Under the pieces are notes generated by a model. The model did no database searches, had not been told where the DNA came from, and saw only the letters and a program-made list of their open reading frames with translations. The position numbers were made by a program, and so were the translations under genes. This document shows positions 13,670 to 58,179 of a stretch of DNA of 64,000 nt, in pieces. The stretch's first letter is position 1; each line of letters opens with the position of its first letter. The DNA lies in IMG/VR virus record IMGVR_UViG_3300031951_000001, positions 1-64,000 of that record. One strand, 5' to 3'.

Positions 13670-14791
13670 ATGAGTTTGAAAATGTACGAACAAGAAGAAC
13701 CAAAGAAATCATCAAAAGATGAAGCATTGTTAAGTTTAATTGATGACTTCAATAATAACGAACTTGATTTAGAATTTTTGGATAATTTCATGGGTGGTTT
13801 GGAAAACTTCATATCACTTTTACAAAAGAAAGGTTGGTTAGATTTATTAGACCCTTTTGCTGAAGGGGCTCAATATATTCAAAATTCGTTATTATATTCT
13901 TTCTATAAAAATGACCCTGACTTTATATATGAAATTATAGAACATTACTTATCTGATATTACAAAAGTCGGAGAAGAATATTATTATGACGCTGATTATT
14001 CCGAACTCGCAAGCATGTTTCAAAGAGGTAATAGAGACATCGGTGAAAAAACAATTGAAGATATTTTGAGCGGTGAATATGATATCTATCAACATGGAGG
14101 TTATGATTCGGATGATGAATATAGAGACGTGTATGATAATTTGGACCACTACGCGAAAAGTGTGGTTGATGAGTTTATTGTAAATGAACTCAAAGCTATG
14201 GGAGTTCTGAAATTTTCTATATATAAAAGAACACCTGAATCATTAAAAGAAATTGCCGAGGAACAAGGTAGTGAAAATGAAATAAAATTGACCGATGAAA
14301 TAATCACCCGTTTGATGTCAGATGACGAGTGTCTTGAATATTTGATTAATAAAGAATTGGATGAGGTGAGAAGTAATTTGAATATGATATTTTCAAGTTG
14401 TTATGGAGATGGTTTGGTTGATTCGTGGTATAAAAGTTTATGGTATGAATTAGAAGGTGTTGTTGTTGATAATAAAGAAGGGGAGGTTTACACTTATAAA
14501 AAATATGGTTGGTCTAAAAATAATACAAGAGAAACCATCACGGCTTACGGTAAAAGATTTAAGGTAACCAAATGTGTTTATGATGTTGTTAAGGGTTGGT
14601 TGGATAGGAATAAAGGTAGAGATGGATACAGCGATAATACAATTGAATATTTTGCTACCTACACTAATCTACTTAAAGATTCTATGGATTACGGACCCAT
14701 GAATTGGTTGAGAGTACCACATTTAGCTGAATGGCCTGACAATAGAGAGTTTGAGAAGTGTATGAATAATAGTGTTGAAAGTTATTTTTAA
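13670..14791 (+). CDS. Acidic hypothetical protein
   Basis: Start ATG 13670 after TATTTAT; no recognised domain. Confidence 0.7.
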   Translation: MSLKMYEQEEPKKSSKDEALLSLIDDFNNNELDLEFLDNFMGGLENFISLLQKKGWLDLLDPFAEGAQYIQNSLLYSFYKNDPDFIYEIIEHYLSDITKVGEEYYYDADYSELASMFQRGNRDIGEKTIEDILSGEYDIYQHGGYDSDDEYRDVYDNLDHYAKSVVDEFIVNELKAMGVLKFSIYKRTPESLKEIAEEQGSENEIKLTDEIITRLMSDDECLEYLINKELDEVRSNLNMIFSSCYGDGLVDSWYKSLWYELEGVVVDNKEGEVYTYKKYGWSKNNTRETITAYGKRFKVTKCVYDVVKGWLDRNKGRDGYSDNTIEYFATYTNLLKDSMDYGPMNWLRVPHLAEWPDNREFEKCMNNSVESYF

Positions 14792-15189
14792 TGGAATACA
14801 AAATTGAAGAAAATAGAATCAATAATTTAGTTTTCGATTTCTTGGAAGACTATTTTAAGAGTGATGAGATTCATTACCATAATCCATACGACCAATATAG
14901 AGATGAGTGGGGAGATGAGGTTGAGGGCGAAAACCCCAATGTAATTGAATATTATATAGGTGATTACTATGAAGACGATTTATTATTCAGATTATACTTC
15001 AAAGATTATTGGACTGGTACAAACTCAACTGCCGACAAGAGAAGAAGTGAATCGCCATTATTAACAATAGCGGATAATGATTTAGAAGATTCATTGAATG
15101 GAATGTTCAGCGAACAGAAAGTTTGGGAAGAAGGATTCAAAGTTTGGTTTACTCACAAATTTGATTTGAAAATAAACAGAATTAGATAA
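14791..15189 (+). CDS. Distant member of the 31.6-34.2 kb paralogue family
   Basis: INNLVFDFL N-terminal helix and LNGMFS...VWFTHKFDLKI C-terminus. Confidence 0.55.
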   Translation: MEYKIEENRINNLVFDFLEDYFKSDEIHYHNPYDQYRDEWGDEVEGENPNVIEYYIGDYYEDDLLFRLYFKDYWTGTNSTADKRRSESPLLTIADNDLEDSLNGMFSEQKVWEEGFKVWFTHKFDLKINRIR

Positions 15190-18562: not shown

Positions 18563-18629
18563 TTATTAGGTTTTATAGTAAATATCTTAAACAAAACGCG
18601 AGTTAAGATAGACTATAATTTTTTAGTTG

Positions 18630-18701
18630 TAGTCGGTAGGGGATTCGAACCCCTATGACAAGAATGAAAATCTTGTATCCTAACCCTTAGATGAACCGAC
18701 C
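18630..18701 (-). tRNA. trnE: tRNA-Glu(TTC)
   Basis: Cloverleaf: GGTCGGT/ACCGACT acceptor, CAAGA-TTTTCAT-TCTTG anticodon arm, AGGGG-TTCGAAT-CCCCT T arm; CCA not encoded. Confidence 0.92.
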
Positions 18702-25997: not shown

Positions 25998-26656
25998 ATG
26001 GATTTTCCTTTATTGTGGGCATGTATTTGGAAAACTTGGAAGTATCATCTTTCAGGTTGTATGTTTATTTTAACAATGTATATCTTTAATGAATGTGGAG
26101 TTTGGGAAGATGAGTTCAGTCTTTGGTATGTTTATGGACCTGTAAGTTTACTTATTCCACTTATCGTTGTGGTACCAGCCATTCTAATGGTCAGAGATTC
26201 ATATAAACATTACTTGGACATAAAAAAATACTATCCCAACGGATATAAAAACAGAGAAAAGAAATGAATCTAATACATGTAATTCTATGTTTGATTGGTG
26301 CGGGATATGCTAAAGGTAGATTGGACCATATCGCTGACACAGGACAAAAGGGTGATGATTGGAAGAACAAATATAAACAAAAGGACGGACAACTCGTACC
26401 TTCAGGAAATCATTGGTGGTACTTTGGTTTATATAAACCAAACTTTCAAGAAAGGTTTCCATTCAGTTCAACTGTTATGGTTTTCGTAACTGATAGATGG
26501 CATTGGTGGCAATTTGCTATGTTGAGGTATTTTTATTTGGCGATTGCTTATGGCGTTGCGGATAACTTTATACATCAGATGTTATTGACATTTGTGGTAT
26601 TCCCCATTGTTCTTGGAGTGACATTCGAGTTAGTATATAAGTGTAAGAAGAAATGA
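25998..26656 (+). CDS. Two membrane proteins (25998..26267, 26264..26656)
   Basis: Hydrophobic helices; overlapping stop/start. Confidence 0.65.
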
Positions 26657-27373
26657 AATTTTTAATCACCGAACAACAAAATGAAAAGATAGTTGAGTTT
26701 GTGCTTAACAAAGAAATGCCCAAAAAGTTTGATTGGTGGAAAGGACTCAAAGTAGTTGACTTTAAAAGAATGATGACCCTAAGACCCAAGCTTGTTAAAT
26801 TGGAAGGGGTTTTAACGGTTGATTCAGAATGGGCGGATAAACAGTGGCCAAGATTTAATCGTGATAAAGAACCATCTTTCGGTGATATAGAACACCCTAC
26901 GTTGTTATCTGAAATTGTTTCAGTTGGAGAGGCGGATGACGTTAGAGATGCTATTAGTGATGTTCTTACTTATACGTTGGGTGAAGAAACATTTACACCA
27001 TCATTAAACCATATAGAAATTAAGTTACAATACTCTGATGATACTGACAAATAAGTTATTAGATAAGTTATTAAATAGTGATTTAATCAAACAGGTATAT
27101 CCTATGGTTGACAATATTAAAACCAGAGTGCTTTGGGATGGGGATGAAGAACTTCCTTTTTATGATATTGCTGTAAAAATATACGTTAATGATGAGGATA
27201 TGACCACGTTCAATATGTTTGAAAAAGGGTTGGACCCTCATTATTTAATTGACTTTTATATGATAGATTTACTTAAATTTGTTAATGTATCAAGAAGAGA
27301 ACTTAATCAAGTATATATTAGAGTGCTCGGCCCAAATGGGGAATCAATCTATGGTGAAATTGGTATAGTTTAA
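26653..27373 (+). CDS. Two hypothetical proteins (26653..27054 with MKFLITEQQ leader; 27038..27373)
   Basis: Coupled ORFs. Confidence 0.65.
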
Positions 27374-27377
27374 TAAT

Positions 27378-28193
27378 ATGAATCTGAAAGAAACAATAAA
27401 AAAAATATTAAGGGAAGAGATGAGACCTTATAAAGCAATGAGAAGAACTAGCTTAATTGATAGTGAAATCGTAAGGTTATTAGATATAGTATATTATGAT
27501 AAAAGAATTTGTGGAAGGTATGAGGACGCGGACATGTTTGTTCGTGTTGTAACTGAGGCTGTGGTCGAGAACCTATACTTCAATACATTTTATATGATGG
27601 ATGATACGTCAGAAGAATGGGAGAAATCAGTTGATTTTATATATGATTATATCAAAGATAGCCACGGAAAAAATCTAAAAGATTACTTCAATAATATGTG
27701 TAATGAACGGGTTGAGATAGATGAATCACTAGTAACGGAACAAATCGAAGATTTTGGAGAAAAAACCAAATTAGAAAAATCAGTAATGAGATTTATTAAT
27801 GCGTATCTTAAAGGTAAAGAACTACCTGAAAACTTTTATGGTGTTGTTGCCGACACATTTGGTGGAAAATACGGAGAAGGTTGTACCATCACATTTTTAA
27901 TGAAAAAACCATTCAAAGTACAAGACTCGGATGATTTACAAGAATTGGGGTTAGATGTAAAAAAATTAATCAAAGATTTTTTTTCAGATGAATTTAGATA
28001 TGGTATTAATATATCAACAACTACCGTCGAACACTATAAAGAATTAAAAAATCGTTTCTTTAATAAACAGAAGGGTGAGTTTACTGAAGGCGAAATAACA
28101 GAAAAGTGCTGGCCAGGTTATACACAAAAAGGAATGAAGACAATGTTTGGTAAAAGATACCCAAACTGCGTAAAGAAAACAAAGAAGAATTAA
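27378..28193 (+). CDS. Modular leader-bearing protein with C-terminal CW..Y....K...G...PNCV motif
   Basis: MNLKETIKKILREE leader; internal LVTE and ITE sites; KCWPGYTQKGMKTMFGKRYPNCVKK tail. Confidence 0.7.
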   Translation: MNLKETIKKILREEMRPYKAMRRTSLIDSEIVRLLDIVYYDKRICGRYEDADMFVRVVTEAVVENLYFNTFYMMDDTSEEWEKSVDFIYDYIKDSHGKNLKDYFNNMCNERVEIDESLVTEQIEDFGEKTKLEKSVMRFINAYLKGKELPENFYGVVADTFGGKYGEGCTITFLMKKPFKVQDSDDLQELGLDVKKLIKDFFSDEFRYGINISTTTVEHYKELKNRFFNKQKGEFTEGEITEKCWPGYTQKGMKTMFGKRYPNCVKKTKKN

Positions 28194-28588
28194 TAAACAG
28201 GAGGTTTGTCTCGTTTGGGATAAATTGATACCTCATCAATATCAACTCCAAACTTTTCGCTAACCCAATCGGCAACTATATCTATTACTTTTGTTTCCCT
28301 AATCAAAATCATCTGACGCATTGTGTCGATAATATTAGGATGTACTTGTAACAGTCCATGACCGTAATGTTTTGTCCCTTCACCACCTGGACCCCAATCG
28401 TCGTATTCACCAGTCCCGAAGAAGTAATATGCGATTTTTTCAGAACCTGTATTGGCGAACAATTCAATTCTATATGCGTCAGGATTGTGGGCATTTACAA
28501 TTTTTTTACCATCTGATTCTGAAAACTTCTCATCTAAATAATTGTAGATGATTGAATGTAATTGACCTTGTGTAATAAAGTATCTCAT
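28190..28588 (-). CDS. Paralogue-family member with leader
   Basis: MRYFITQGQLHSIIYNYLD...IVADWVSEKFGVDI. Confidence 0.65.
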   Translation of the reverse strand: MRYFITQGQLHSIIYNYLDEKFSESDGKKIVNAHNPDAYRIELFANTGSEKIAYYFFGTGEYDDWGPGGEGTKHYGHGLLQVHPNIIDTMRQMILIRETKVIDIVADWVSEKFGVDIDEVSIYPKRDKPPVY

Positions 28589-28682: not shown

Positions 28683-28988
28683 TTATTGTTTTCTTAATTT
28701 GGCTCGTTTGATTGTAGGGGAGTTCTTGGAATAGAACTTTTTATACATAGGGTCGATAACATCATCATCTACATCCCTAGTAGAGATGTTCTCAATATCA
28801 AGTTCATCATCTGAATATTCTTCGGGTTCACCCTGATTCATAAAAGAATTTTTATACCACTTTCCACTACCCATAGATGATGGGTCATGGTAGAGATAAT
28901 CATTATCCTGTTCTTCTTCACTTTCTTTTATAATTCTTTTAACGAGTTTAATCAAATCAGATTCAGTTAATCTTACAACTTTTTTCAT
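28683..28988 (-). CDS. Leader-bearing acidic protein
   Basis: MKKVVRLTESDLIKLVKRIIKE. Confidence 0.7.
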   Translation of the reverse strand: MKKVVRLTESDLIKLVKRIIKESEEEQDNDYLYHDPSSMGSGKWYKNSFMNQGEPEEYSDDELDIENISTRDVDDDVIDPMYKKFYSKNSPTIKRAKLRKQ

Positions 28989-29711: not shown

Positions 29712-29787
29712 TTTAACAAGAACATTAATAAGAATGGGGACTCAATTTGGGTCCCCTTTTTTCTGTATATTAGGTATTTATTATAGT

Positions 29788-31644
29788 ATGAATCTCAAAG
29801 AATCAATTAAAAGAATATTAAGGGAAGAAACCGATATACCACTTAAAATTAGAAGGAGGATTTTACCCAAACTAATTGAAAATGCGTTTCAAACGGCATT
29901 GGACGGTAATACAATGTTGAAAACCAAGCCAGGTTCCATGTTACACAAAGCTTCTTTTATAACGTTCGCAAATTTCGTTATTGATGATATGGTTGAGTAT
30001 ATGGAGGACCAAATAAACATGGATGGAAATTCATATTATTATGGTAATGACGATGCTTATATCGAAGAAGTGAGAAACCCGCTCCTTAAACATTATGGTG
30101 ATAGAATAAAAAAGAGATATGATGATATTGTTGGGGGGGATGTTTTTGAATCAGTATTAGAAGAAACAAATATACCACTCCAAGTTAAAAGGAGGATTAA
30201 TGGTGACTCATTGGCCGAATTAATACATGATATTAAAAGTTTAATTGATTCTGGCTACGATGAGTCAGATGCGATATACGATACGGTAAGACAATTTATC
30301 GCTTCAAAACAATTCAAACTTAACAATGATTCAGAACAATCTTATTGGGATTCATACATTGAAGTGGAAGAACCATTAGTTGATTATCTGAAAAGTAAAT
30401 TGAATATACGAGAGTCCGTATTAAGGGAAGAAACCGAAGAATATAAAGTAAAATTGGTTACAAATATAATCTATACTTTATATGATAATATATCATTTAT
30501 AAAACAATCAACTTTCAACGGAAAACCTTTACTTATAATTTATTTTGACTCTGATGATACTGCAGCAAACATTGAGTCGTGGTTTGATGAAAAAATATCA
30601 AGAGATATTGAGGAATGGACTTCAGGAAATATTGTTGTTTGTCCAGATTGGATATTTAATTGGGATTCGAGAAAGAAAAATGCTGATGTGTTTATAAACA
30701 CTGAACTTATAAAATATGATAACTTGGGGAATGTTGTTAATGAGTCAATATTAAGGGAAGAAATGAGCTCAATGATGAGAAGAATATTCAGAAGGGTTGA
30801 CCCCGAAAAGATGGACGGAATATTCGGAGAAGGTCTTGATACAATGACAACAAGATACATTCAGAACCAACATAATTGGCACGCAATGAACTTAGATAAG
30901 TTTAAGTCAGGTATTGTATCATATGTTATTGTTGATTTATGTATGAAATACTCTGACGTATGTTTTGGAGCTGGGGATTTTTACAACCAAGTATGGGAAT
31001 TCTTATTGAGTCATTATTCGGATGTAATGGAAGAAAGATGGAATGAGATTATGTCGGGAGAGGTTAATGAATCGGTATTAAAGGAAGATAGAAAGGCAAA
31101 AGAAACTATAAGTGATTTGGTTAAAGAGTTTGGTTTGATTAAAACTTCAGATATGGTTGGGTTGTCGATATCACAAATTGTTAAAGTAACTAATATACCG
31201 ATTGATTCAGATACCGCCAACCAAATTTTGGTCGAAATGATGAATAACGATGAATTGAAAACCAAATACAAAGATTTTAATATTCACGCAAGTTCAAATG
31301 ACGTGTTTTATTGGGAAGCAATGGTAAAAACAGGACATTTCCATGATGATATGATTGAAAACATAACAGTTGCGGCAACACCATTTTGGGATGGAGTCAA
31401 ATATACACCTGTTGAAATAGAATGGTATACATTACTTAATTATTATGGGGTAACTGTTTATGAAACATCAGGTGAAGGAAATTTTTATAAAGAACTTAAA
31501 CATCAAACAAATTTTGAAAGTGTTGATGAGTTATTGAATTGGTATGAGGAATTCTATTTACCTGAAGTGTATAATATGGTAATGAATACGTTATTACCAA
31601 AAATGCATAAGTTGGTTGATTACGAAATAAAACAAAGAGGTTAG
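29788..31644 (+). CDS. Five-module leader-punctuated protein (polyprotein-like)
   Basis: Start ATG 29788 after TATTTAT; ILREE then four internal ES(V/I)L(E/R/K)E(E/D) junctions. Confidence 0.7.
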   Translation: MNLKESIKRILREETDIPLKIRRRILPKLIENAFQTALDGNTMLKTKPGSMLHKASFITFANFVIDDMVEYMEDQINMDGNSYYYGNDDAYIEEVRNPLLKHYGDRIKKRYDDIVGGDVFESVLEETNIPLQVKRRINGDSLAELIHDIKSLIDSGYDESDAIYDTVRQFIASKQFKLNNDSEQSYWDSYIEVEEPLVDYLKSKLNIRESVLREETEEYKVKLVTNIIYTLYDNISFIKQSTFNGKPLLIIYFDSDDTAANIESWFDEKISRDIEEWTSGNIVVCPDWIFNWDSRKKNADVFINTELIKYDNLGNVVNESILREEMSSMMRRIFRRVDPEKMDGIFGEGLDTMTTRYIQNQHNWHAMNLDKFKSGIVSYVIVDLCMKYSDVCFGAGDFYNQVWEFLLSHYSDVMEERWNEIMSGEVNESVLKEDRKAKETISDLVKEFGLIKTSDMVGLSISQIVKVTNIPIDSDTANQILVEMMNNDELKTKYKDFNIHASSNDVFYWEAMVKTGHFHDDMIENITVAATPFWDGVKYTPVEIEWYTLLNYYGVTVYETSGEGNFYKELKHQTNFESVDELLNWYEEFYLPEVYNMVMNTLLPKMHKLVDYEIKQRG

Positions 31645-32024
31645 ACGATACGTCCGCTTCTTACATCAAAGACCTTATAGTCGGGGAGCATAGATTCAAA
31701 AGCATCAGAGATAAAGTATTTACCATTGGTCATCCAAACAGGGTGAGGTAACATCTCCTCAAAAAACCCATCATACTTATGGCTGTAGTATAAATCACCC
31801 GTTTTACCATCACTAAAAATAGAAAACATCATCATAGGATTACCGGCTGAATCGTATAGGACAATTCTATTACTATCCTCACTATATGATTCAATCTCAT
31901 CAACAATATAAGGAACGATGATATGTTTAAACTTATTGTATAGGTCCTCATACTCAAAATCCATCCAATGACGTTCAAGTTCGGATATAAGATTAAGTTG
32001 TGATTCGGTGATAAGGTATTTCAT
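31641..32024 (-). CDS. Paralogue array member 1
   Basis: MKYLITESQL leader; own TATTTAT. Confidence 0.75.
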   Translation of the reverse strand: MKYLITESQLNLISELERHWMDFEYEDLYNKFKHIIVPYIVDEIESYSEDSNRIVLYDSAGNPMMMFSIFSDGKTGDLYYSHKYDGFFEEMLPHPVWMTNGKYFISDAFESMLPDYKVFDVRSGRIV

Positions 32025-32036
32025 ATAAGATAAATA

Positions 32037-32372
32037 TTACATTGATAGTTCGGCGTCACCTATCAGACCACCGTATACTTTGACATCCGAAGGTTCAATC
32101 TTACCGGAGTTAGAGTTTTCCTCAACAAAATGGGTGAGAATTAATTCGGCCTCATCCTTATCAATAGAAAAGAATTCACATACACTGTTTATAAAATCTT
32201 CGGATATTATTAAAGTACCTGACCTTCTTCTATACCTCATAACGGCGTGTGTATCGTCTAAAGAATAAACAAAACTTATATAACTTGTCCAATAAACCGC
32301 CTCAAGATTTAGTGAATTAATATAATTAAAAATAATACTGTTTAATTTAGATTCGGTGATTAGGAATTTCAT
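32037..32372 (-). CDS. Paralogue array member 2
   Basis: MKFLITESKLNSIIFNYI. Confidence 0.75.
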   Translation of the reverse strand: MKFLITESKLNSIIFNYINSLNLEAVYWTSYISFVYSLDDTHAVMRYRRRSGTLIISEDFINSVCEFFSIDKDEAELILTHFVEENSNSGKIEPSDVKVYGGLIGDAELSM

Positions 32373-32387
32373 ATAAGATAAATATAA

Positions 32388-32699
32388 TTAATACCCAACA
32401 ATCGGACTGGCAACTTCCACATTAATAGATTTTATTCCGAGTTTATTTTCAATCCATTTATTAATTACATTAATGGAGTCCCCATAATCTAAAGAAAAGA
32501 ATTTGCTAACTTCGTCGACCAAGTCGTAGTGTATTGTACACCAGCGGTCTTTCGGATGATATCTAACTTGAGCATATTCATCATCTTCAGAGTTGACATA
32601 GTATAATCTATTCCCCATTTTAATTACAACGAAGTCCTGATTGTCAAGATACTTAAAAACTATACTATCAAATTTAGATTCGGTGATAAGATATTTCAT
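32388..32699 (-). CDS. Paralogue array member 3
   Basis: MKYLITESKFDSIVFKYLDNQDF. Confidence 0.75.
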   Translation of the reverse strand: MKYLITESKFDSIVFKYLDNQDFVVIKMGNRLYYVNSEDDEYAQVRYHPKDRWCTIHYDLVDEVSKFFSLDYGDSINVINKWIENKLGIKSINVEVASPIVGY

Positions 32700-32731
32700 A
32701 TAAGATAAATATATGTAATATTTATTATCAT

Positions 32732-33157
32732 ATGAGTATTAAAGAATCCATAAGAAGAATATTAAGGGAAGAAACTTTACTTAAAACCAATATAAAAGAC
32801 ATGATTTCCAAACATGGATTTTATATAACGTCCAAAATGTTAGGTGGAGTTGATATTATGAATAGTATTCTTAATATAAAAGGTTCACAGGAAGAAATGA
32901 TTTTCATTGTTAAAGCCATAATGGAACATGATGTTGAAGTTTTGGGTAATGTATGTAACTATCAAATAGTTCCGACCATGTACTCATTTAAACTATATGT
33001 AGAAATACCAAAATATTATCCCAACCATTCCGATGATTATTACCCAAACAAACAAAAAACATTTGAGGCGAGAGATTATATATCTGACTTAATAAAAAAG
33101 TTTGGAAATGAAAAGGTGAGAGGATATAATATATACGTTCAGGTAGGAAATTGTTAA
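32732..33157 (+). CDS. Leader-bearing hypothetical protein
   Basis: MSIKESIRRILREE; TATTTAT upstream. Confidence 0.7.
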   Translation: MSIKESIRRILREETLLKTNIKDMISKHGFYITSKMLGGVDIMNSILNIKGSQEEMIFIVKAIMEHDVEVLGNVCNYQIVPTMYSFKLYVEIPKYYPNHSDDYYPNKQKTFEARDYISDLIKKFGNEKVRGYNIYVQVGNC

Positions 33158-33158
33158 A

Positions 33159-33476
33159 TTAGTCAGCTCCGTAATCAGAGAAGATATAGTCAAAATCAAA
33201 ATCAATTTTGGTTTTAATCCATTCACCAATAATATTCAAAGCGGTCTCCAAGTCCAAACTAAAGAATGATGCGACCTCAACAACTAAATCTGAACTTACA
33301 AAACATTCTTTATTAACACGATTTGTGTTGATTGATATATATCCACCACTTTCCCAACTCTCCTTAGAGTCCCAAAAGACATAACCAGAGTGATACTTCA
33401 TTTTATAAAAGTCCTGGTTATTTAAGTAGTCAAAGACAAGATTAGTAAGTTTAGATTCGGTGATAAGGAATTTCAT
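33159..33476 (-). CDS. Paralogue array member 4
   Basis: MKFLITESKLTNLVFDYLNNQDF. Confidence 0.75.
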   Translation of the reverse strand: MKFLITESKLTNLVFDYLNNQDFYKMKYHSGYVFWDSKESWESGGYISINTNRVNKECFVSSDLVVEVASFFSLDLETALNIIGEWIKTKIDFDFDYIFSDYGAD

Positions 33477-33838
33477 TCGGTTTTAACAATTAATCTGTGA
33501 GAAGACCCACTGTTGATAGTGTTTTCTATTTTACCAACCTTAATACCCAAAGTATCACTAACCCATACTTTTATTATCTCTAAACAATCCAAATCATCAA
33601 TAGAGAAGAAATCAGATAATTCCTTAATTAAATCATAATTCACATATACCCAATTCCTAACAAAACCAAAAGAGTTTATGTGATAAACACTAATCTGAGC
33701 GTAAAGGTCGGACTCATTGTTTAAGAAGTATATGTAGTTGTCAAATTTCTTCTTGTTGTCATATACTATAAAATCCTGATTATCCAAATACATAGACACT
33801 GTATTATACAATTTAGATTCTGTGATTAAGTATTTCAT
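33473..33838 (-). CDS. Paralogue array member 5
   Basis: MKYLITESKLYNTVSMYLDNQDF. Confidence 0.75.
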   Translation of the reverse strand: MKYLITESKLYNTVSMYLDNQDFIVYDNKKKFDNYIYFLNNESDLYAQISVYHINSFGFVRNWVYVNYDLIKELSDFFSIDDLDCLEIIKVWVSDTLGIKVGKIENTINSGSSHRLIVKTE

Positions 33839-33855
33839 ATGATAATAAATATGAT

Positions 33856-34179
33856 TTAGTTAGGTATTACCAACGCATAACCTGAACTCGGAGCAACACC
33901 GATGCTTTCGACCTCCATTTTTATGATATTCTCAACCCATTTAACAATAACTTTATCAAAGTCAGAATCTTGTAAAGAAAAGAACATAGAAATTTCATTA
34001 TATAAATCGTAAGATACGTAACACCGACCATCTTTGTCAAATCTTATTTGAGCATATTCATCTGATTCAGAATTGACAAAGTATATGCTTTCTCTATTTT
34101 TAAACCGAATAAAGTCCTGATTGTCCAAATACTGAAGGATAATACTATCCAATTTAGATTCGGTGATTAGGTATTTCAT
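33856..34179 (-). CDS. Paralogue array member 6
   Basis: MKYLITESKLDSIILQYLDNQDF. Confidence 0.75.
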   Translation of the reverse strand: MKYLITESKLDSIILQYLDNQDFIRFKNRESIYFVNSESDEYAQIRFDKDGRCYVSYDLYNEISMFFSLQDSDFDKVIVKWVENIIKMEVESIGVAPSSGYALVIPN

Positions 34180-35244
34180 ATGATAATAAATATAAAGAAA
34201 TTACGAACTAAACAAACTCACTCATTCATCCCCCACTTTGTGGGTCGTTCCGTTCCACTAGCGTTTCACTCCACTGATGTATTCGTTCATTTGTTTATTT
34301 CCTAATTTCTCCCCCATTAATTAAGGACACATATGAGGGGACAATATATTATACCTTATGGTATAATACTGAAAGGTATAAAAGAATACCCTATCGGGTA
34401 TTAATTTGTGGTATACATGTGGTATTATACCTTATCGGGTATAGAGTAACCCACAACCCACACTATATTGTGATTTATATGTAACATTGTAATGTTATGA
34501 TAACAAACTATGGTAAATCCATATTATAGTGTGATTTTAACAGGGTTATATAGTTGTCCCCATATAAGGTGTCAGTGTTGAAGGGGAATATAATACCCCA
34601 CTAAAGTGGTCTCGTTGAAGAATTATTAATGGTCTATTTAGGGTCTATCCTAACACACTACGTGTTTCCCCGCTCCACATACTATAACTTACATTTTTTG
34701 CTGGGGTTTATATACATATAAAAAACTGGTCCTTACGACCCCTACAGAGGGGAAAAATCCCCATTCTAATACCCTACATGACCAATAGTGGTGGTAAATT
34801 GTGGTAAGACATGGTGGTAAAAGGTGGGAGAAAAGTGTCAGAGGGGATTATCCCCATCGTCAAGTGAGACTGACATTTTGACAAAATCAAGTTTTTTAAC
34901 ATAATTAACAAAGAAAAATTACACCTGACATGATGTCATCCCCAACCTGATTGACTTTTTACTACATGTTATTATGTTTAGTTATATGTACCTTAATAAC
35001 TTTAGAACCGATGTTACAAGACACGGGGATGACTACATCGTTAATTATGAGGGTGATGACTCATATGGACATTGTATATACAAACAGTTAGACCTTACGG
35101 GGAGTAACAAACCTATACGACAGAATGTGATGTTATTAACACACTGTCAGATGGGGGGAATAATAGATAACATAAATAAAAAGTCCCCACTCAAAGAGGG
35201 GGACCATGACAACCTGTCCAAAGAGATTAGGGAACACTCGTTAT

Positions 35245-36499: not shown

Positions 36500-36877
36500 A
36501 TGAAAAAAACAGTTAGACTTACAGAATCAGATTTAGTTAATTTGATTAAGAGAATTATAAAAGAAGAAGAGGGAACGGACTTATCTAATGTTAGAGCCGA
36601 GTTTATAGATTTAATAAAGAGTATGAATTGGGAGTTTAATCCAAATCATAACATGTCAGGGTTTGCGTTTGTCCCTAAAAAAGGGGACATTGGATATAGT
36701 GGGTTTAAGCAAGACAGTTTCAATATGTATATTGGCAAACCATTAATCTTTAATGGTAGTGATGATAATGAATATTGTTATTTAGATAAGAATAATAATT
36801 TTGTTCTCAAGAGATTTGGTAAAAAGTCAACCTCCCCTTTATCATCAGGGATTGGTGGTATTAAGAATTTATTGTGA
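36500..36877 (+). CDS. Leader-bearing protein
   Basis: MKKTVRLTESDLVNLIKRIIKE; TATTTAT upstream. Confidence 0.75.
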   Translation: MKKTVRLTESDLVNLIKRIIKEEEGTDLSNVRAEFIDLIKSMNWEFNPNHNMSGFAFVPKKGDIGYSGFKQDSFNMYIGKPLIFNGSDDNEYCYLDKNNNFVLKRFGKKSTSPLSSGIGGIKNLL

Positions 36878-37246
36878 GATATTAACCCCTCCGATGATAG
36901 TATTGTCGGACCGACCCCTCCCACAAAGAGGGGTTTTTTATTTTCCCGTATATTGACCCCCCATTCTATAAAGGTCCCATATACTGAAAAAAAATTTCTG
37001 GAAAAAATTTGATAAATTGGGAACTGTGTATTATCCTTATACTCTATGAAAAATTTCTTTATTAAATATAAGAAACCTATTGTGGTAACATTGTCTATAA
37101 CCATCCTTCAACTGCTTTTTGGGTTTGACCCCAAGTTTACATTGATTAATATTATTTGGTTATTTCTATAATTTTTTCCCTTCGGGTTGTCAATCCCCCT
37201 ACCCCCTTTTTTGTTTTATGATATATTTATATATAAAATTAATAAT

Positions 37247-37621
37247 ATGAAAAAAGTTATAAGATTAACCGAATCGGATTTAGTTCGTTTAGTAAAACAA
37301 GTTATAAATGAGCAATCTATTCCTGAACCCGAAAAGATTTCCGCTGACCATGCTAAATTTGAGGAATATGTAAAGACAAAATGGGGTTGGAAGGAAGACC
37401 CTTATGCTTCAATTGACTTTGAAGGAGGTGATAACAAGTTTACAATATGTGATGGTCCGTGTGGTTCACTTATTCCTGGTACAGATGTTAATAGTGTTAC
37501 ATGGGATGGAAAAACTAAAACGGTATATGGAACCGTATCATTTGGAGTTGACCCCAAACCAATTTCATGGAGTTATAAATTTAACCAAATGAAAACATGG
37601 TTTGATTCTTCTTTCGGATAA
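37247..37621 (+). CDS. Leader-bearing protein
   Basis: MKKVIRLTESDL..VINE; start ATG 37247. Confidence 0.75.
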   Translation: MKKVIRLTESDLVRLVKQVINEQSIPEPEKISADHAKFEEYVKTKWGWKEDPYASIDFEGGDNKFTICDGPCGSLIPGTDVNSVTWDGKTKTVYGTVSFGVDPKPISWSYKFNQMKTWFDSSFG

Positions 37622-37724
37622 ATCAAATATGATTCATTAAAAATACACCCCCTATTCAATGAGTAGGGGTTTTTTGTTTTCTATAACACGACCCCCTTTT
37701 TTATTCTGATATATTTATTCTTAT

Positions 37725-39036
37725 ATGAGATATATTATAACGGAAGAACAAAATAATATTATTCGTGTCCTACGAAGAATTGACCAAGACCATGATTTGA
37801 TTCAGGATATTGTTGTTGAGGGAATGGAAATGTATTTGTGTGATTATGACCCCTTTAATTATTTTTATGAATTTTTATGTCGGAACTCAGCATTTACTTA
37901 TCTTTTAAATTATTTTGATAACCCACGTCAAGAAGGGTTCATGAAAATGGAAGATTATATGACTGATTATATTAAGGAAAACTTTAAGGAAATGATTGTT
38001 ACCTATTGGGAAGATAATAAGGAATATTGTTAAAAAATTTTTTTCCGTTCCGATTCCCCCTACCCCCTTTTTTATTTTGATGTATTTATTGTTATATGAA
38101 TCTCACAGAATTATCACATGTTTTAACGAAGGTGTATAACAAACTTGGAAACAAGTATCTTGTTGATAATTATATTACCGAGCCGTTTGAGTTTGAGGTT
38201 AAGGTAAAATATGGTGACCCATATGAATATTATAAGTATTATGCCGAGGTTTATAGTATTCCTGATATGCCACATGATTTTAGGTATAGACCTGAAGTTA
38301 GAAAAGAAAAAAAGAAGTATGCCGTTGGAGCCGATATTAGCGTTGTTGGGAGTGATTTTAAAAGTATGATTGAATATGTTGACCCTGAAAAGAAACAGTC
38401 CATTGGTGTTAACTTTATGAATGTTAAAAAATAATTTTTTCCCTTCGGGTTTGTAATCCCCCTACCCCCTTTTTTGTTTGAGATATATTTATCTATATGA
38501 AATACATTCTTACGGAGTCACAGTATGCTGGGCTGATGAAACTAATTAAAAAACAAGAAGAGGATTTGAGTTTTTTGAAAAGTAGTGTGGTCTCTACAAT
38601 CGAACATGACGTAACAGATTTTTTAAACTCCAAGTTTCAAGGTAGATTTGGACACTATGGTTATACGCAATATCCCGTATTTTTTATTTATCCTGATAAA
38701 TTAACCTCTGAACTTACAAAATATAATAGGAGAGAACCGGCTTTGGTTATTGCTTATAATATAAAAAAATCTACAGGCAAAGTTGAAATTAATATTTTTT
38801 GGAATACTAAAGTGAGTTTTAATTATAAAACAGAAGATGGTAAATGGAAAAGAAATAAGTATCCCCAAAATACCATTAAGTGGGATTATATGAATAACCC
38901 TGACGGAGAAGAGGAATTCTTATCTAAATTGGAAAAGACCATTAACGGAAGAATAAGTGAAAGGGCTCAAAACAAAATTATTGATGATTTTGAAAAACTT
39001 TATAGAGAAGAATATCAAACTAGTATATTAAATTAA
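37725..39036 (+). CDS. Three hypothetical proteins (37725..38033, 38096..38434, 38497..39036)
   Basis: Each has its own TATTTAT; leaders MRYIITEEQ, MNLTE and MKYILTESQ. Confidence 0.7.
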
Positions 39037-39106
39037 TTTTCTAAAATTTTTTCCTTCGGGCCGGCAATCCCATACCCACTTTTTTATTTCCGATATATTT
39101 ATATAT

Positions 39107-40325
39107 ATGAAAAAGATAATTAGACTTACCGAATCCGAACTAATCAAAGTTGTAAAACGTATTATTAACGAACAGCATTTTGATGAATTTATGACATCAT
39201 CTGAAACATCTTCAGTCTCTAATGTCGTACAAAATCTTGAAAGAGAAATGGGTGATTACAAAAATAAAATGGATGGATTTTTATCCGATTTGAAATCATC
39301 AGGTGATATTGATTGGAATAGATTCTTGAAGCAAGTTAGAAATCAAACAAGTGAAATATTTCATAAGTATGATGATGAATCTTTATCTAGGGAGGACTCA
39401 TTAAACCTCTTCAATACATTCTCCCAACTCCAATCAAACCTTCTTAATCATTATAAAGGACAATACAGAAATTCTTAATTAATATAATATTATGAAAAAG
39501 ATAATTAGACTTACAGAATCAGATTTAACAAGAATTGTTAAACGTGCTATTAACGAATCGGACCGAGCTTATGGTCATGAAGAAATAGGTAAACTATATT
39601 CTAAATTGGGAGACGATGAGGATGTTGAATTGAGTGACGAGTCTGGCGAATTGTCAGGTGGGATTGTTAAGAAGATTGACTATGTAAAGAATATGCTGAG
39701 AAAAGCCATAAAGAATGAGGATTGGGAAATGGTTAATAGAGCCATGAGTTATCTTAACATGAAATTATAAAAAATAGTTTTTTCATTATATTTATAATAA
39801 AACAATTATAATGGGAAAAAAAATTCGATTGACCGAATCTGAGTTAACCAAATTAATAAAGAAAATGATTTCGGAAGACTTGGAAATGATGGACGTTTCC
39901 TCAGATTCTGATTATTATAAAGCAAGAAAACGAGAAGTATCCATACCCAAAGACGATTTGGCGTTACTAGGTCATATGGCCACAAGGTATTGTGAAAGAA
40001 AAGAAAATCTACCAGATTGTCAAAGAGTTCAGGATTTGTATTCCCGTTATCAATTATTTATGTAAAATTAAAGAAAATGAAAAAACCTATTAGATTAACC
40101 GAATCCGACCTTAATAGAATTGTTAAAAAAACAATTATGGAAATGGGAGGTATGACCAATTCAATTGAGATGTATGACTTCAATAAAAGAAAAATGATAA
40201 ATGGATTACATCAATTGAAATCCTCCATAGATAGTGGAGATAATGAAACTGCATCACATATTGTACAAGTTTTACTTTTAACATTAAACGAACTTGATTC
40301 TTATGTTGATGAAATGAAAAGATAA
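39107..40325 (+). CDS. Four RLTE(S)(D/E)L leader proteins (39107..39478, 39492..39770, 39811..40065, 40077..40325)
   Basis: Shared N-terminal 20 aa, unrelated C-termini. Confidence 0.75.
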
Positions 40326-57090: not shown

Positions 57091-58179
57091 ATGTTATCAG
57101 ATAAAATTAAAAATATAATATTCGAATATCTTTTAGATGAAATCTATAAAGTTGAGATAATCTATTATCGCGACAGTGTATGGTTTATTGACAGAGAGAA
57201 TCGGTATTGGTATTTTGAATATCACAAAGTGGACAAACACCTTTGGTGGAGATGGTCTCATTTTACCACGGCTCTAACAATGTTTTCAATGGAGGCTGAA
57301 AAGGAACAGTATTTATTAGGTGAACTGGTTAATATGATTTTAACCAAGAAACAAAAACTTGAATCAAAGTATCCAAACAAGATATTCAAGACCGTTGGAA
57401 GTGTTATGAATTTTGGGGATAAGGTGGACGAGGTATTAAATAGCGAGGTAGAAACAACTCTTCATCGAAGGTTAGACCGTCGTTATCAGGTGGATGAGGT
57501 CCTAAATAACGAGGTAGAAACAACTGATGGTTATGGATGGAAACCAAGATTTGTGGTGGATGAGGTATTAAATAACGAGATAGAAACAACGGAAATGCAT
57601 CTCACCCCAAGGCAGTGGAAGGTGGACGATGTATTAAATAACGAGGTGGAAACAACATCCGGGTCTGACATAGCAATATCGCAAGGGTTGGGTGAGGTCC
57701 TAAATAACGAGGCGAAAACAACCGACAAAGTAGGTTCTCAATTCTGCGTAGAGGCGGATGCTGTCATAACTTTTGAGGTTGAAAAAACTAGTCATGGGAC
57801 ACTGATTGATGAAGATAAAATAATAGATGAGGTATTATCAGTTGACATTGAAACAATTGGATATTCAAAAACGCATAGGCTTCGTCCTGTAACAGGAGCA
57901 CTTGATTACAATGATAATCCGATTGAAATAAAATCAATTAGAAAATTAAAAGGTGAAAGTCCCCTCCAAGATGTTATCGTCAGTCAAATTCTTGATGAAT
58001 CAGATAAGGTGACCGACAAGCTCAAGATTAAAGAGGATGATTATGTTAAAACATATAGTCACGATGTTTATATGTGTGACCACCTTGTTCAGAATGTTTT
58101 AGATGTTGGTGTTAATTCAATACATTATGATGCTGAATCACACACTCCACTTATTGACGGAATACTAAAAAAGGCTTAA
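57091..58179 (+). CDS. Paralogue-family domain followed by 22-aa repeats (12 conserved + 10 variable residues)
   Basis: VDEVLNNEVETT repeated; N-terminal domain aligns with the 33856..34179 protein. Confidence 0.8.
   Translation: MLSDKIKNIIFEYLLDEIYKVEIIYYRDSVWFIDRENRYWYFEYHKVDKHLWWRWSHFTTALTMFSMEAEKEQYLLGELVNMILTKKQKLESKYPNKIFKTVGSVMNFGDKVDEVLNSEVETTLHRRLDRRYQVDEVLNNEVETTDGYGWKPRFVVDEVLNNEIETTEMHLTPRQWKVDDVLNNEVETTSGSDIAISQGLGEVLNNEAKTTDKVGSQFCVEADAVITFEVEKTSHGTLIDEDKIIDEVLSVDIETIGYSKTHRLRPVTGALDYNDNPIEIKSIRKLKGESPLQDVIVSQILDESDKVTDKLKIKEDDYVKTYSHDVYMCDHLVQNVLDVGVNSIHYDAESHTPLIDGILKKA
57423..57857 (+). repeat. In-frame CRISPR-like array: 36-nt repeats with 30-nt unrelated spacers
   Basis: Repeats start at 57423, 57489, 57555, 57621 and 57687, with degenerate copies at 57753 and 57822; consensus GGTGGATGAGGTATTAAATAACGAGGTAGAAACAAC. 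Confidence 0.9.

What the first reader, a model, noticed from the sequence alone, without database searches (positions are those of the whole stretch)
31641..34193. Tandem cassette array of six paralogues with near-identical 5' blocks and divergent bodies
Seen: six 100-130-aa minus-strand genes start MK(Y/F)LITES(K/Q)(L/F), four continuing to YL(D/N)NQDF. They share a ~40-nt DNA block (promoter, start codon, leader), keep a pattern such as DL..E(V/I)S.FFSL...II..W(V/I), and diverge freely elsewhere, most at the C-terminal tip. More distant members lie at 14791, 28190 and 57091. Inference: a gene accordion under diversifying selection, typical of host-interaction or anti-defence proteins, with the repeats as recombination points.
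Basis: partly seen in the sequence, partly recalled or inferred. Interest (0 to 1): 0.62.

Follow-up and report, generated by a model that had tools for sequence, protein, structure and literature searches.

The report
Leader-tagged small-protein array in jumbo phage
A 322-kb T4-like phage of freshwater Bacteroidota carries a tandem array of six old paralogous genes that all start with the same short peptide tag, which most likely sends the proteins into the phage head to be injected with the DNA, although no virion data exist to prove it.

Summary
Six minus-strand genes (31641-34179) encode 103-127-aa acidic proteins that all start MK[YF]LITES and share a block of promoter, ATG and leader codons.

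It is not a recent gene accordion.
- Each copy has its closest relative in another phage.
- Orthologue dN/dS is 0.1-0.5.
- Identical arrays occur in independent samples.
- Copy number does range from 1 to 14 among related phages, and the 5' blocks show recombination mosaics.

The leader is a separable protein tag.
- Residues 1-6 are unstructured in a confident model (pLDDT 92) with no match among known folds.
- Its amino acids are fixed while its codons vary (pN/pS 0.01).
- Family members lacking it exist.
- 32 of about 360 genes carry a related leader; 1.9 are expected.

The fixed Ile5 and Glu7 with a free residue 6 match the I/L-x-E cut site of T4's gp21 protease, and this phage encodes a gp21-type protease. 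Leader-bearing genes use the phage promoter class that also precedes terminase, sheath and scaffold genes. Leaderless twins use host-type promoters.

Best reading (about 0.45): T4-internal-protein-like cargo, targeted to the prohead, trimmed after Glu7 and injected. The biochemical function is unknown.

The parts
33856..34179 (-). Array member 1, 107 aa, MKYLITESKL..., pI 4.45
   Evidence: AlphaFold model with pLDDT 91.9: residues 1-6 coil, helix 7-19, four strands, two helices, one strand.
33473..33838 (-). Array member 2, 121 aa
   Evidence: Orthologues in L007, L021, L023 and L017.
33159..33476 (-). Array member 3, 105 aa. Its start overlaps the stop of member 2 (ATGA) and it has no promoter box of its own.
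32732..33157 (+). Embedded opposite-strand gene, 141 aa, class C leader MSIKESIRRILREE, own ATATTTAT box at 32718-32725. A 141-aa opposite-strand gene sits in the same place in a relative's array.
32388..32699 (-). Array member 4, 103 aa
   Evidence: Orthologue L037 2658-2969, 82-83% aa identity, dN/dS 0.25.
32037..32372 (-). Array member 5, 111 aa
31641..32024 (-). Array member 6, 127 aa, the most divergent. Its 3' end overlaps by 4 nt the end of the convergent 636-aa ORF.
34186..34193 (-). ATATTTAT promoter-like box 5 nt upstream of the ATG of member 1. Equivalent boxes lie at 33845-33852, 32705-32712, 32378-32385 and 32030-32037.
   Evidence: The same box precedes 67 genes genome-wide, including terminase, sheath and scaffold genes.
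28190..28588 (-). Dispersed family member, 132 aa, with a degenerate leader MRYFITQG (Glu7 replaced by Gln) behind a host-type TAnnTTTG promoter
26653..27054 (+). Dispersed family member, 133 aa, MKFLITEQQ
   Evidence: E 1e-5, full length
57100..57357 (+). Family domain without leader at the N-terminus of the 362-aa ORF 57091-58179
   Evidence: E 1e-9, residues 4-89
29734..31644 (+). Neighbouring 636-aa ORF made of five modules, each preceded by a class C leader-like motif (..ES[IV]L[RK]E[ED])
   Evidence: Two of the modules occur in L037 as separate genes starting MNL[KQ]ESI[RK]R[IV]LREE, and in the opposite order.

Best explanation
The array is an old multigene family of small (about 100 aa), acidic alpha/beta proteins. 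It sits in the variable region of a 322-kb T4-like myophage, probably of freshwater Bacteroidota.

Each cassette consists of a phage-type promoter box (ATATTTAT, 5-6 nt before the ATG, so the mRNA is probably leaderless), an invariant unstructured N-terminal heptapeptide M-K-[Y/F]-[L/I]-I-x-E, and a body that diverges under moderate purifying selection.

I propose that the heptapeptide works like the capsid-targeting sequence of T4 internal proteins. It would bind the protein to the scaffolding core while the prohead assembles. The phage's gp21-type protease would then cut it off after Glu7 at the I/L-x-E motif. The mature protein would stay in the head and be injected with the DNA, where it acts on the host at time zero in takeover or counter-defence. 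That target is unknown.

The shared promoter-plus-leader block also gives about 45-75 nt of homology, through which cassettes are exchanged, gained and lost between co-infecting relatives.

Shown: the family, its age, variable copy number, recombination mosaics, protein-level constraint on the tag, the tag's separability from the fold, its genome-wide spread, the T4-type protease, and the link between leader and promoter class.

Inferred: targeting, cleavage, packaging, injection and function.
For: (1) The phage has a T4-type head module: Peptidase_S77 (gp21) at genome 117086-117811, a Gp23 major capsid protein and a T4-type terminase. BLASTP aligns its capsid protein's ...HLINE|ATS with T4 gp23's ...FLTE|AEI maturation site at Glu65.

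(2) In 208 leader-bearing homologues, position 5 is I (201) or L (7) and position 7 is E in 203. Position 6 varies (T, S, K, N, A). That is P3 and P1 fixed with P2 free. In the T4 IPIII capsid-targeting sequence, residues 8 and 10 (I-x-E) govern processing and residues 4 and 7 (Tyr, Phe) govern targeting (PMC9026906).

(3) Real T4 N-termini read from the T4 record: IPI ...STITE|A, Alt MELITE|L, gp24 ...LLRE|S, IPII/III MKTYQEFIAE|A.

(4) The constraint is on the protein, not the DNA. Across 99 distinct 5' regions the amino acids are fixed while the codons vary (Tyr TAC 52/TAT 42; Ile ATC 61/ATA 22/ATT 16; Thr ACC 54/ACA 37; Ser TCA 59/TCT 37). pN/pS is 0.01 for codons 1-8 against 0.38-0.49 for the body.

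(5) The tag is not part of the fold.
- Mean pLDDT of residues 1-10 is 66 against 92-97 elsewhere, and helix 1 starts at residue 7.
- The 57091 domain lacks it.
- The second domains of four out of five two-domain fusions lack it, and a leaderless subfamily exists.

(6) Related leaders head unrelated bodies. 32 of about 360 genes have [LIV][TS]E[SEQ] in the first 10 residues, with 1.9 expected. They include a GH19 muralytic protein and a PG_binding_1 protein, and an ORF lying between the protease and scaffold genes.

(7) Leader-bearing genes use the phage promoter class that also precedes virion genes.
- 17 of 32 have ATATTTAT, against 50 of 328 other genes; only 1 of 32 has the host-type TAnnTTTG box, and that one has lost Glu7.
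- Among family members in related loci, 62 of 90 leader-bearing copies have TATTTAT. The 13 truly leaderless copies have it in 0 cases and the host-type box in 8. Both kinds lie side by side in L053.

(8) Precedents. [quoted passage not shown] SPN3US head paralogues gp53 and gp54 have identical N-terminal propeptides containing the cleavage motif but diverged bodies, and head paralogue families range from 2 to 20 members between phages (PMC5694885).
Against: - There are no virion proteomics, no cultured relative and no RNA data.
- I/L-x-E is a short motif. 83 genes have one in the first 10 residues against 40 expected, so the motif alone is weak evidence.
- The ATATTTAT box also lies upstream of a DnaB-like helicase gene, so it is not proven to be a late promoter.
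- About 30 leader-bearing genes would be a very large set of packaged proteins.
- T4's IPII and IPIII are described as basic proteins (PMC9026906), while these are acidic (pI 4.4-5.3).
- There is no sequence similarity to T4 IPI beyond the cut site.
- The complex prediction of protease plus array protein gave no verdict.
- ITESxL could partly be a helix N-cap with a hydrophobic staple (Ile5-Leu10). That would explain some of the conservation without any targeting role.
Confidence: 0.45

Rival explanations
1. The proteins stay in the infected cell and are not packaged. They are middle-gene products, and the invariant N-terminal heptapeptide is a short linear motif for some other partner. Candidates are a phage or host chaperone, a protease that sets half-life, a localisation factor, or simply a strong helix-start motif inherited from a common ancestor.
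For: - The genes sit in a mixed-strand variable region with many small ORFs of unknown function.
- The ATATTTAT box is not restricted to virion genes.
- The phage encodes its own sigma-70 family factor behind a host-type promoter, so ATATTTAT could mark a middle class.
- T6 as N-cap with Ile5 and Leu10 fits a hydrophobic-staple helix start, and helix 1 begins at residue 7.
Against: - Residues 2-5 precede the helix, are modelled with low confidence, and yet are invariant.
- The domain folds and persists without the leader in fusions and leaderless variants.
- The pattern of fixed P3 and P1 with a free P2 is what a gp21-type site predicts, not what a helix cap predicts.
- Class C leaders recur between the modules of multi-module proteins, as processing sites would.
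Confidence: 0.3
2. One reading: a gene accordion, meaning recent tandem amplification and contraction of one gene under diversifying selection in an arms race.
For: - Copy number is 1-14 in related loci.
- A few within-genome sister pairs exist (L012 copies 4 and 6; L002 copies 2 and 6).
- Two orthologue pairs have dN/dS above 1, but at very low dS.
Against: - The window's copies are 21-54% identical and are never sisters.
- Orthologous lineages are shared across phages.
- dN/dS is mostly 0.1-0.5.
- The array is identical in three other IMG/VR contigs, and other runs hold it without any difference in the contigs laid.
Confidence: 0.1
3. The shared block is conserved only at the nucleic-acid level, as promoter, start of a leaderless mRNA, translation signal or recombination site. 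On this view the peptide has no function of its own.
For: - The block includes a genome-wide promoter box placed 5-6 nt from the ATG.
- Metagenome contig depth spikes at the leader blocks, so the DNA block is highly repeated in the community.
- Recombination mosaics end there.
Against: - Synonymous sites of the leader vary freely while the amino acids are fixed. pS in codons 1-8 is 0.26, higher than in the body, with pN of 0.003.
- Member 3 keeps the peptide without the promoter.
- Related leaders are written in different codons on other genes, with the promoter at -23 instead of -13.
Confidence: 0.07

Closest known systems
T4 internal proteins IPI, IPII, IPIII and Alt with their capsid-targeting sequence (CTS)
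   Same: - Small, non-conserved proteins in the variable region of a T4-type genome.
- A short conserved N-terminal peptide (MK, an aromatic residue, ... I-x-E) on otherwise diverged bodies.
- A gp21-type protease is present.
- The T4 sites ITE|A (IPI) and LITE|L (Alt) are nearly the same as LITE|S here (PMC9026906, PMC3012670).
   Different: - No sequence or detected fold relation to IPI.
- The leader is 7 residues here, against 10-19 in T4.
- Six tandem paralogues, and about 30 leader-bearing genes in three leader classes, against about five in T4.
- The proteins are acidic.
- Packaging and cleavage have not been shown.
Head paralogue families of giant phages (SPN3US families A and B; phiKZ/201phi2-1 inner-body proteins)
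   Same: - Tandem families of head or ejection proteins whose number differs widely between related phages (2 to 20).
- Paralogues gp53 and gp54 share an identical N-terminal propeptide carrying the protease motif while the rest has diverged (PMC5694885).
   Different: - A different phage lineage, and a different cleavage motif (A/S/G-x-E there).
- No hit to pfam12699 or any other Pfam family.
- The SPN3US families are proven by mass spectrometry; this one is not.
[quoted passage not shown]
   Same: - A short conserved promoter-containing motif flanks each small non-essential ORF.
- Close relatives differ by replacement, insertion and deletion of ORFs at these motifs (PMC2839356, PMC4122927).
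   Different: - Here the homology block extends into the coding leader.
- Within the array there is no room for a stem-loop, since the gaps are only 12-17 nt.
- GC-rich stem plus T-run elements do precede the box at other leader genes.
Gene accordions (recent tandem amplification, e.g. T4 counter-defence amplification, bioRxiv 10.1101/2022.04.14.488369)
   Same: Tandem same-strand copies of a small accessory gene in a phage.
   Different: The copies are old (21-54% identity), orthologous lineages are shared between phages, and no within-population copy-number variation was seen.

Membership tests
T4-type CTS-bearing internal (ejected) head proteins | The phage assembles heads with a gp21-type (Peptidase_S77) prohead protease and a scaffolding core | tested here: met
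   PF03420 at 87 bits at genome 117086-117811. It is flanked by portal-side genes, an acidic 506-aa scaffold-like ORF and a Gp23 capsid protein.
T4-type CTS-bearing internal (ejected) head proteins | A short N-terminal peptide conserved among otherwise diverged or unrelated proteins | tested here: met
   MK[YF][LI]I.E in 208 of 270 homologues. 32 of 360 genes carry a related leader against 1.9 expected. pN/pS is 0.01.
T4-type CTS-bearing internal (ejected) head proteins | The peptide ends in the protease motif I/L-x-E, with P3 and P1 required and P2 free | tested here: met
   Position 5 is I or L in 100%, position 7 is E in 98%, position 6 is variable. T4 sites were read from the T4 record.
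T4-type CTS-bearing internal (ejected) head proteins | The protein is present in the mature virion in processed form and is ejected | not testable with these tools
   No cultured relative and no proteome. tblastn against 50,697 phage records found nothing.
T4-type CTS-bearing internal (ejected) head proteins | The leader suffices to target a foreign protein into the head | not testable with these tools
   This needs an experiment. The protease-substrate complex prediction gave no verdict.
T4 IPI/IPII/IPIII protein families (homology) | Sequence or fold similarity to T4 IPI | tested here: not met
   hhalign probability 0.1%, with only ITES aligned to ITEA. No PDB match with Foldseek E below 0.1 or VIA Z above 4.2.
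Giant-phage inner-body / head paralogue family A (pfam12699) | Match to pfam12699 or to another named virion family | tested here: not met
   No Pfam or PHROG family reached significance for any of the six proteins or for the 123 aligned homologues.
Gene accordion | Near-identical tandem units that form one clade within the genome | tested here: not met
   21-54% identity. On the tree the window's six copies need six changes, meaning none are sisters.
Gene accordion | Copy-number polymorphism within the phage population | tested here: not met
   L004-L006 carry all six cassettes plus 28190 with the same coordinates and scores as the window. Contigs of three runs match with no differences, and the only joints have short sides at the repeats. 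Only assembled contigs were available, so rare variants could be missed.
PeSL-like modular shuffling cassettes | A conserved promoter motif flanks the ORFs, and close relatives show mosaic exchange at it | tested here: met
PeSL-like modular shuffling cassettes | A stem-loop terminator joined to the promoter | tested here: inconclusive
   The gaps within the array are 12-17 nt, with no room for one. GC-rich segments plus T-runs directly precede the box at 37725, 38497, 39107 and 118104. They were not folded.

The most novel reading that the evidence does not exclude
This phage clade uses an N-terminal 'address code'. About 9% of its genes carry one of three related leaders: MK[YF][LI]ITE.., MKK.[IV]RLTESDL..IVK..I.E, and M.LKESI[RK]RILREE.

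The leaders would route a large, exchangeable cargo into the capsid. The cargo includes muralytic proteins and multi-module polyproteins cut at internal leaders. The same effector domain also exists in leaderless copies behind host-type early promoters. The phage would therefore deliver one activity by two routes: pre-made and injected, or made early in the infected cell.
Probability: 0.25. Interest if true: 0.75.

Novelty: new variant of a known kind. Interest (0 to 1): 0.55.

Why it matters
If the leader is a capsid-targeting and processing tag, it gives a sequence-only way to read the injected-protein repertoire of an uncultured, widespread group of freshwater jumbo phages. The family has 654 clusters at 50% identity, and near-identical DNA turns up in lake and freshwater metagenomes from about 15 studies.

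It would extend the T4 capsid-targeting principle to a distant T4-like lineage on Bacteroidota and to a much larger cargo set. It would also provide a 7-residue tag for loading foreign proteins into such capsids.

The ~100-aa domain is modelled with high confidence yet has no match among solved structures. Its paired leader-bearing and leaderless forms would be good candidates for new host-takeover or counter-defence activities.

Independently of function, the locus is a clear case of cassette shuffling at a block made of promoter plus coding leader.

Tried and rejected
- **Pfam and PHROGs** on the six proteins, the embedded gene and the 636-aa ORF: nothing above threshold. In a Pfam scan of 123 homologues, 60 hit Ig_NUP210_9th weakly (best E 6e-5). 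I take this as one chance similarity repeated among homologues, not as a relationship.
- **PDB by sequence:** only AcrIIA13 at E 0.44, not significant.
- **Fold searches:** PDB with Foldseek (best E 0.14), VIA-align wide (best Z 4.2), BFVD (only paralogues from one uncultured phage) and the ESM Atlas by features and by shape (only the protein's own family).
- **tblastn against 50,697 phage records:** an array member, a class B protein, the class C gene and a 25-aa class B leader gave no match.
- **Complex prediction of the prohead protease with array member 1:** no verdict (score 0.00). This is not evidence either way.
- **Possible likeness of the class B leader to the scaffold N-terminus** (LVK..[IL]NEQ): not supported by a leader HMM, so dropped.
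- **Read laying:** only assembled contigs were available and no RNA holder is on record. The many 'joints' have sides of 21-40 nt at the conserved blocks, so I read them as other cassettes or relatives, not as chimeras.
- **14791-15189 as a family member:** rejected (E 0.44).
- **ATATTTAT as a strictly late promoter:** not sustained, because it also lies upstream of a DnaB-like helicase gene.
- **Secretion signal or lipoprotein reading of the leader:** rejected from the sequence, which is charged and has no hydrophobic stretch.
- **No alternative genetic code** was needed; all frames are open under table 11.

Full report
**Setting.** The window is the first 64 kb of a 322,372-bp IMG/VR virus record that CheckV rates as complete. 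The genome encodes:
- a T4-type prohead protease (Peptidase_S77, 87 bits);
- a Gp23-family major capsid protein;
- a T4-type large terminase and a tail sheath;
- its own sigma-70 family factor.

The nearest capsid proteins in deposited phage records are from Microcystis phage Mel-JY01, an uncultured phage and Flavobacterium phage 'immuto', at about 40-45% identity. Many ORFs start with Bacteroidota-style signal peptides. Near-identical DNA is held by lake and freshwater metagenomes from about 15 studies. It is therefore an uncultured T4-like jumbo myophage, probably of freshwater Bacteroidota.

**The observation.** Six minus-strand ORFs of 103-127 aa between 31641 and 34179 all begin MK[YF]LITES[KQ].
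- They are 21-54% identical to each other.
- They share one repeat family whose core is ATATTTAT, 5-6 nt of spacer, ATG and the leader codons.
- One copy (33159-33476) overlaps its upstream neighbour and keeps only the coding leader.
- A plus-strand gene, 32732-33157 (141 aa, MSIKESIRRILREE), interrupts the array. A 141-aa opposite-strand gene sits at the same place in a relative's array.
- Of the 'distant members', 28190 and the N-terminal domain of 57091 are confirmed, 26653 is an additional member, and 14791 is not supported.

**How large and how known is the family?**
- The word-based search found 506 clusters at 90% identity, all 'hypothetical'.
- The exhaustive profile search found 654 clusters at 50% identity.
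- No Pfam, PHROG or PDB sequence match is significant, and no deposited phage has a member.
- An AlphaFold model built on 123 sequences is confident (pLDDT 91.9, pTM 0.82). It runs coil 1-6, helix 7-19, four strands, two helices and a final strand.
- Neither Foldseek nor VIA-align finds a solved relative (best E 0.14, best Z 4.2). BFVD and the Atlas return only the protein's own family.
- The proteins are acidic, with pI 4.4-5.3.

**Accordion or old family?**
- Related contigs hold 1 to 14 members.
- A close relative (L037, first member 88-89% identical) has five cassettes of partly different kinds.
- On a maximum-likelihood tree of 72 members, none of the window's six copies are sisters. Each groups with orthologues from other phages, and only a few within-genome pairs exist elsewhere.
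- Three other IMG/VR contigs carry all six cassettes plus 28190 with the same coordinates and scores as the window.
- Contigs from three further runs match without a single difference.

The family is therefore old. Its composition differs between phage lineages, but it is stable within this phage. It is not a recent amplification.

**Selection.** Nei-Gojobori dN/dS for best orthologue pairs is mostly 0.1-0.5. Pooled over 17 pairs, the values are:

| Codons | pN/pS | pS |
|---|---|---|
| 1-8 | 0.01 | 0.26 |
| 9-20 | 0.23 | 0.36 |
| Four body bins, including the C-terminal tip | 0.38-0.49 | 0.09-0.15 |

The body is thus under moderate purifying selection. There is no sign of pervasive diversifying selection, although site-level tests were not run.

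**Recombination.** The two- to four-fold excess of synonymous divergence in the first 20 codons shows that 5' ends and bodies have different histories. A direct example is the pair formed by the window's 33856 gene and L037's 2004 gene.
- They differ at a single base across roughly 260 nt of the gene body.
- They are diverged in codons about 8-30, upstream of the promoter block, and in the next cassette.
- blastn of L037 against the window shows a patchwork of 67-97% segments.

It resembles the PeSL-mediated modular shuffling described for T4-type hyperplastic regions (PMC2839356).

**The leader is a protein tag.**
- Across 99 distinct 5' regions the amino acids M1, K2, I5 and E7 are invariant while the codons vary synonymously.
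- In 208 leader-bearing homologues, position 5 is I or L, position 7 is E in 203, and position 6 is free (T, S, K, N, A).
- The tag lies outside the fold: the first ten residues have a mean pLDDT of 66, and helix 1 starts at residue 7.
- The domain exists without it in three settings. These are the 57091 protein, the second domain of four out of five two-domain fusions, and a leaderless subfamily starting M(I/K)N..KIIFKYLD.
- Genome-wide, 32 of about 360 genes have [LIV][TS]E[SEQ] within the first ten residues, against 1.9 expected from the internal rate.

The leaders fall into three related classes:
- class A: MK[YF][LI]ITE[SE];
- class B: MKK.[IV]RLTESDL..[IL]VK..I.E, in 11 genes, seven of them clustered at 36500-40325;
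- class C: M.[LI]KESI[RK][RK]ILREE.

Class A-like leaders head a GH19 muralytic protein and a PG_binding_1 protein. A related leader heads an ORF lying between the protease and scaffold genes.

Class C motifs also recur between modules. The neighbouring 636-aa ORF is five modules, each preceded by ..ES[IV]L[RK]E[ED]. In L037 two of these modules are separate genes starting MNL[KQ]ESI[RK]R[IV]LREE, in the opposite order. Further internal copies occur in relatives.

**Why a capsid-targeting and processing tag is the best reading.** In T4, internal proteins and Alt join the scaffolding core through a short N-terminal capsid-targeting sequence, which gp21 then removes (PMC5694885, PMC9026906). In IPIII, residues 4 and 7 matter for targeting and residues 8 and 10 (I-x-E) for processing (PMC9026906).

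N-termini read from the T4 record:
- IPI ends its 19-residue propeptide in ITE|A. The length follows from 95 aa in full against the 76-residue mature form reported in PMC3012670.
- Alt begins MELITE|L.
- gp24 begins MAKINELLRE|S.
- gp23 is cut at FLTE|A.

This phage's capsid protein aligns HLINE|A with that gp23 site. The array's LITE|S, class B's RLTE|S ... I.E, and class C's LKE|S ... LRE|E all fit this rule. So does the pattern of fixed P3 and P1 with a free P2.

The closest precedent for 'identical leader, diverged body, variable number' is in giant phage SPN3US. Its head paralogues gp53 and gp54 share an identical N-terminal propeptide carrying the cleavage motif, and head paralogue families range from 2 to 20 members between phages (PMC5694885).

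**Promoter classes.** Two upstream motifs divide the genome.
- The Bacteroidota host-type box TAnnTTTG, often with TTTG about 20 nt upstream, precedes 35 genes. None of them lies in the 140-300 kb structural block. One is the gene immediately upstream of the phage sigma factor gene.
- ATATTTAT precedes 67 genes, including terminase, scaffold and sheath genes.
- Leader-bearing genes have ATATTTAT in 17 of 32 cases, against 50 of 328 other genes. They have the host-type box in 1 of 32 cases, and that single gene (28190) has Gln in place of Glu7.
- Among family members in related loci, 62 of 90 leader-bearing copies have TATTTAT. The 13 truly leaderless copies have it in 0 cases and the host-type box in 8.
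- Both kinds lie side by side on contig L053.

This fits proteins that are made with the virion parts and carry the tag, alongside early-made twins that do not need it. The number of independent events is small. ATATTTAT also lies upstream of a DnaB-like helicase gene, so its timing is not established.

**What remains open.**
- Nothing shows that the proteins are in virions or are cleaved.
- The complex prediction gave no verdict.
- No RNA run holds the locus.
- The biochemical function of the domain is unknown. Anti-defence or takeover is an analogy with T4 IPI*, not a result.
- Part of the conservation of ITESxL could reflect a helix N-cap with a hydrophobic staple.

I put the targeting-and-processing model at about 0.45. 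An intracellular role with another partner for the motif stands at about 0.3, the accordion reading as the main explanation at about 0.1, and a purely nucleic-acid explanation at under 0.1.

**Novelty.** The protein family and its fold are undescribed. The leader system is a new variant of a known kind (T4 capsid-targeting cargo, giant-phage head paralogue families, PeSL-like shuffling). It is notable for its scale, its three leader classes, the internal leaders in fused modules, and the paired leader-bearing and leaderless forms.

Noticed in passing
window 29734-31644 (+); L037 3680-4623 (-): The 636-aa ORF is a fusion of five modules, each preceded by a class C leader-like motif (ES[IV]L[RK]E[ED]). 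Modules 0, 1 and 3 are paralogous (E 4e-9 and 1e-4). In the close relative L037, modules 3 and 4 are separate genes with full MNL[KQ]ESI[RK]R[IV]LREE leaders, in swapped order. The ORF looks like a polyprotein or a record of cassette fusion and fission.
   Followed up: partly
window 36500-40325 (+), also 28683-28988 (-): Cluster of seven small genes (82-125 aa) that all start MKK.[IV]RLTESDL..[IL]VK..I.E (class B leader, with two I/L-x-E motifs 15 residues apart). Several are preceded by a GC-rich segment plus T-run directly upstream of the ATATTTAT box, resembling terminator-promoter cassettes.
   Followed up: partly
window 34200-34970: An ORF-free stretch of about 780 nt upstream of the array, richer in G+C (0.37). 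It holds several short palindromes of the type TATACC.TAT.GGTATA and direct repeats GGTGGTAAA..GTGG. It is 73-80% conserved in L037, L007 and L009, and metagenome contig depth spikes at 34604-34911. It could be a regulatory region or an origin; there is no Rfam match.
   Followed up: no
whole genome G000; sigma gene at 301298-302098: There are two upstream motif classes. The host-type TTTG..TAnnTTTG box precedes 35 genes, none of them in the 140-300 kb structural block. The phage-type ATATTTAT box lies at -12/-14 or -22/-24 before 67 genes. The phage's sigma-70 family gene lies directly behind a gene with a host-type promoter, which suggests a cascade from host RNA polymerase to phage sigma to ATATTTAT promoters.
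   Followed up: partly
proteins P0133, P0135, P0143, P0222, P0200, P0261; loci L053, L054: Leaderless family variants often carry 2-5 tandem repeats of the last helix-end and strand motif (VENTLQM[RK]VT[ND]T) at the C-terminus. Leader-bearing members have this motif only once.
   Followed up: no
genome 118104-119060 (L034 8104-9060): A 318-aa ORF with a leader-like start (MKITISEGQYKIL) and an ATATTTAT box at -13. It lies between the prohead protease and scaffold-like genes, has no Pfam match, and is a candidate prohead core or packaged protein.
   Followed up: partly
genome 66050-66868 (-) and 314821-315891 (-): Class A-like leaders (MRKLLITEEEK.., MLKKLLISEEEQ..) head a Glyco_hydro_19 domain protein and a PG_binding_1 protein. 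A further recurring motif, [ST]E.[ED][KR]..IL.L[HY], follows the leader in several genes (40330, 44761, 126638).
   Followed up: partly
genome 120692-122545 (L034 10692-12545): The major capsid protein is 617 aa against T4's 521 aa. It has a long unaligned middle region between the conserved N- and C-terminal parts, followed by a Cys-rich stretch (CPTCPTCGSD).
   Followed up: no
window 18629-18701 (-): A single tRNA-Glu (anticodon TTC), found by both ARAGORN and Rfam. About 1.2 kb around it has no ORF of 90 aa or more.
   Followed up: no
genome 117086-117811 (L034 7086-7811): The prohead protease has ILIE at residues 15-18. T4 gp21 is reported to have a site conforming to its own cleavage logo near its N-terminus (LIE-9, PMC9026906), so this may be a self-processing site.
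   Followed up: no
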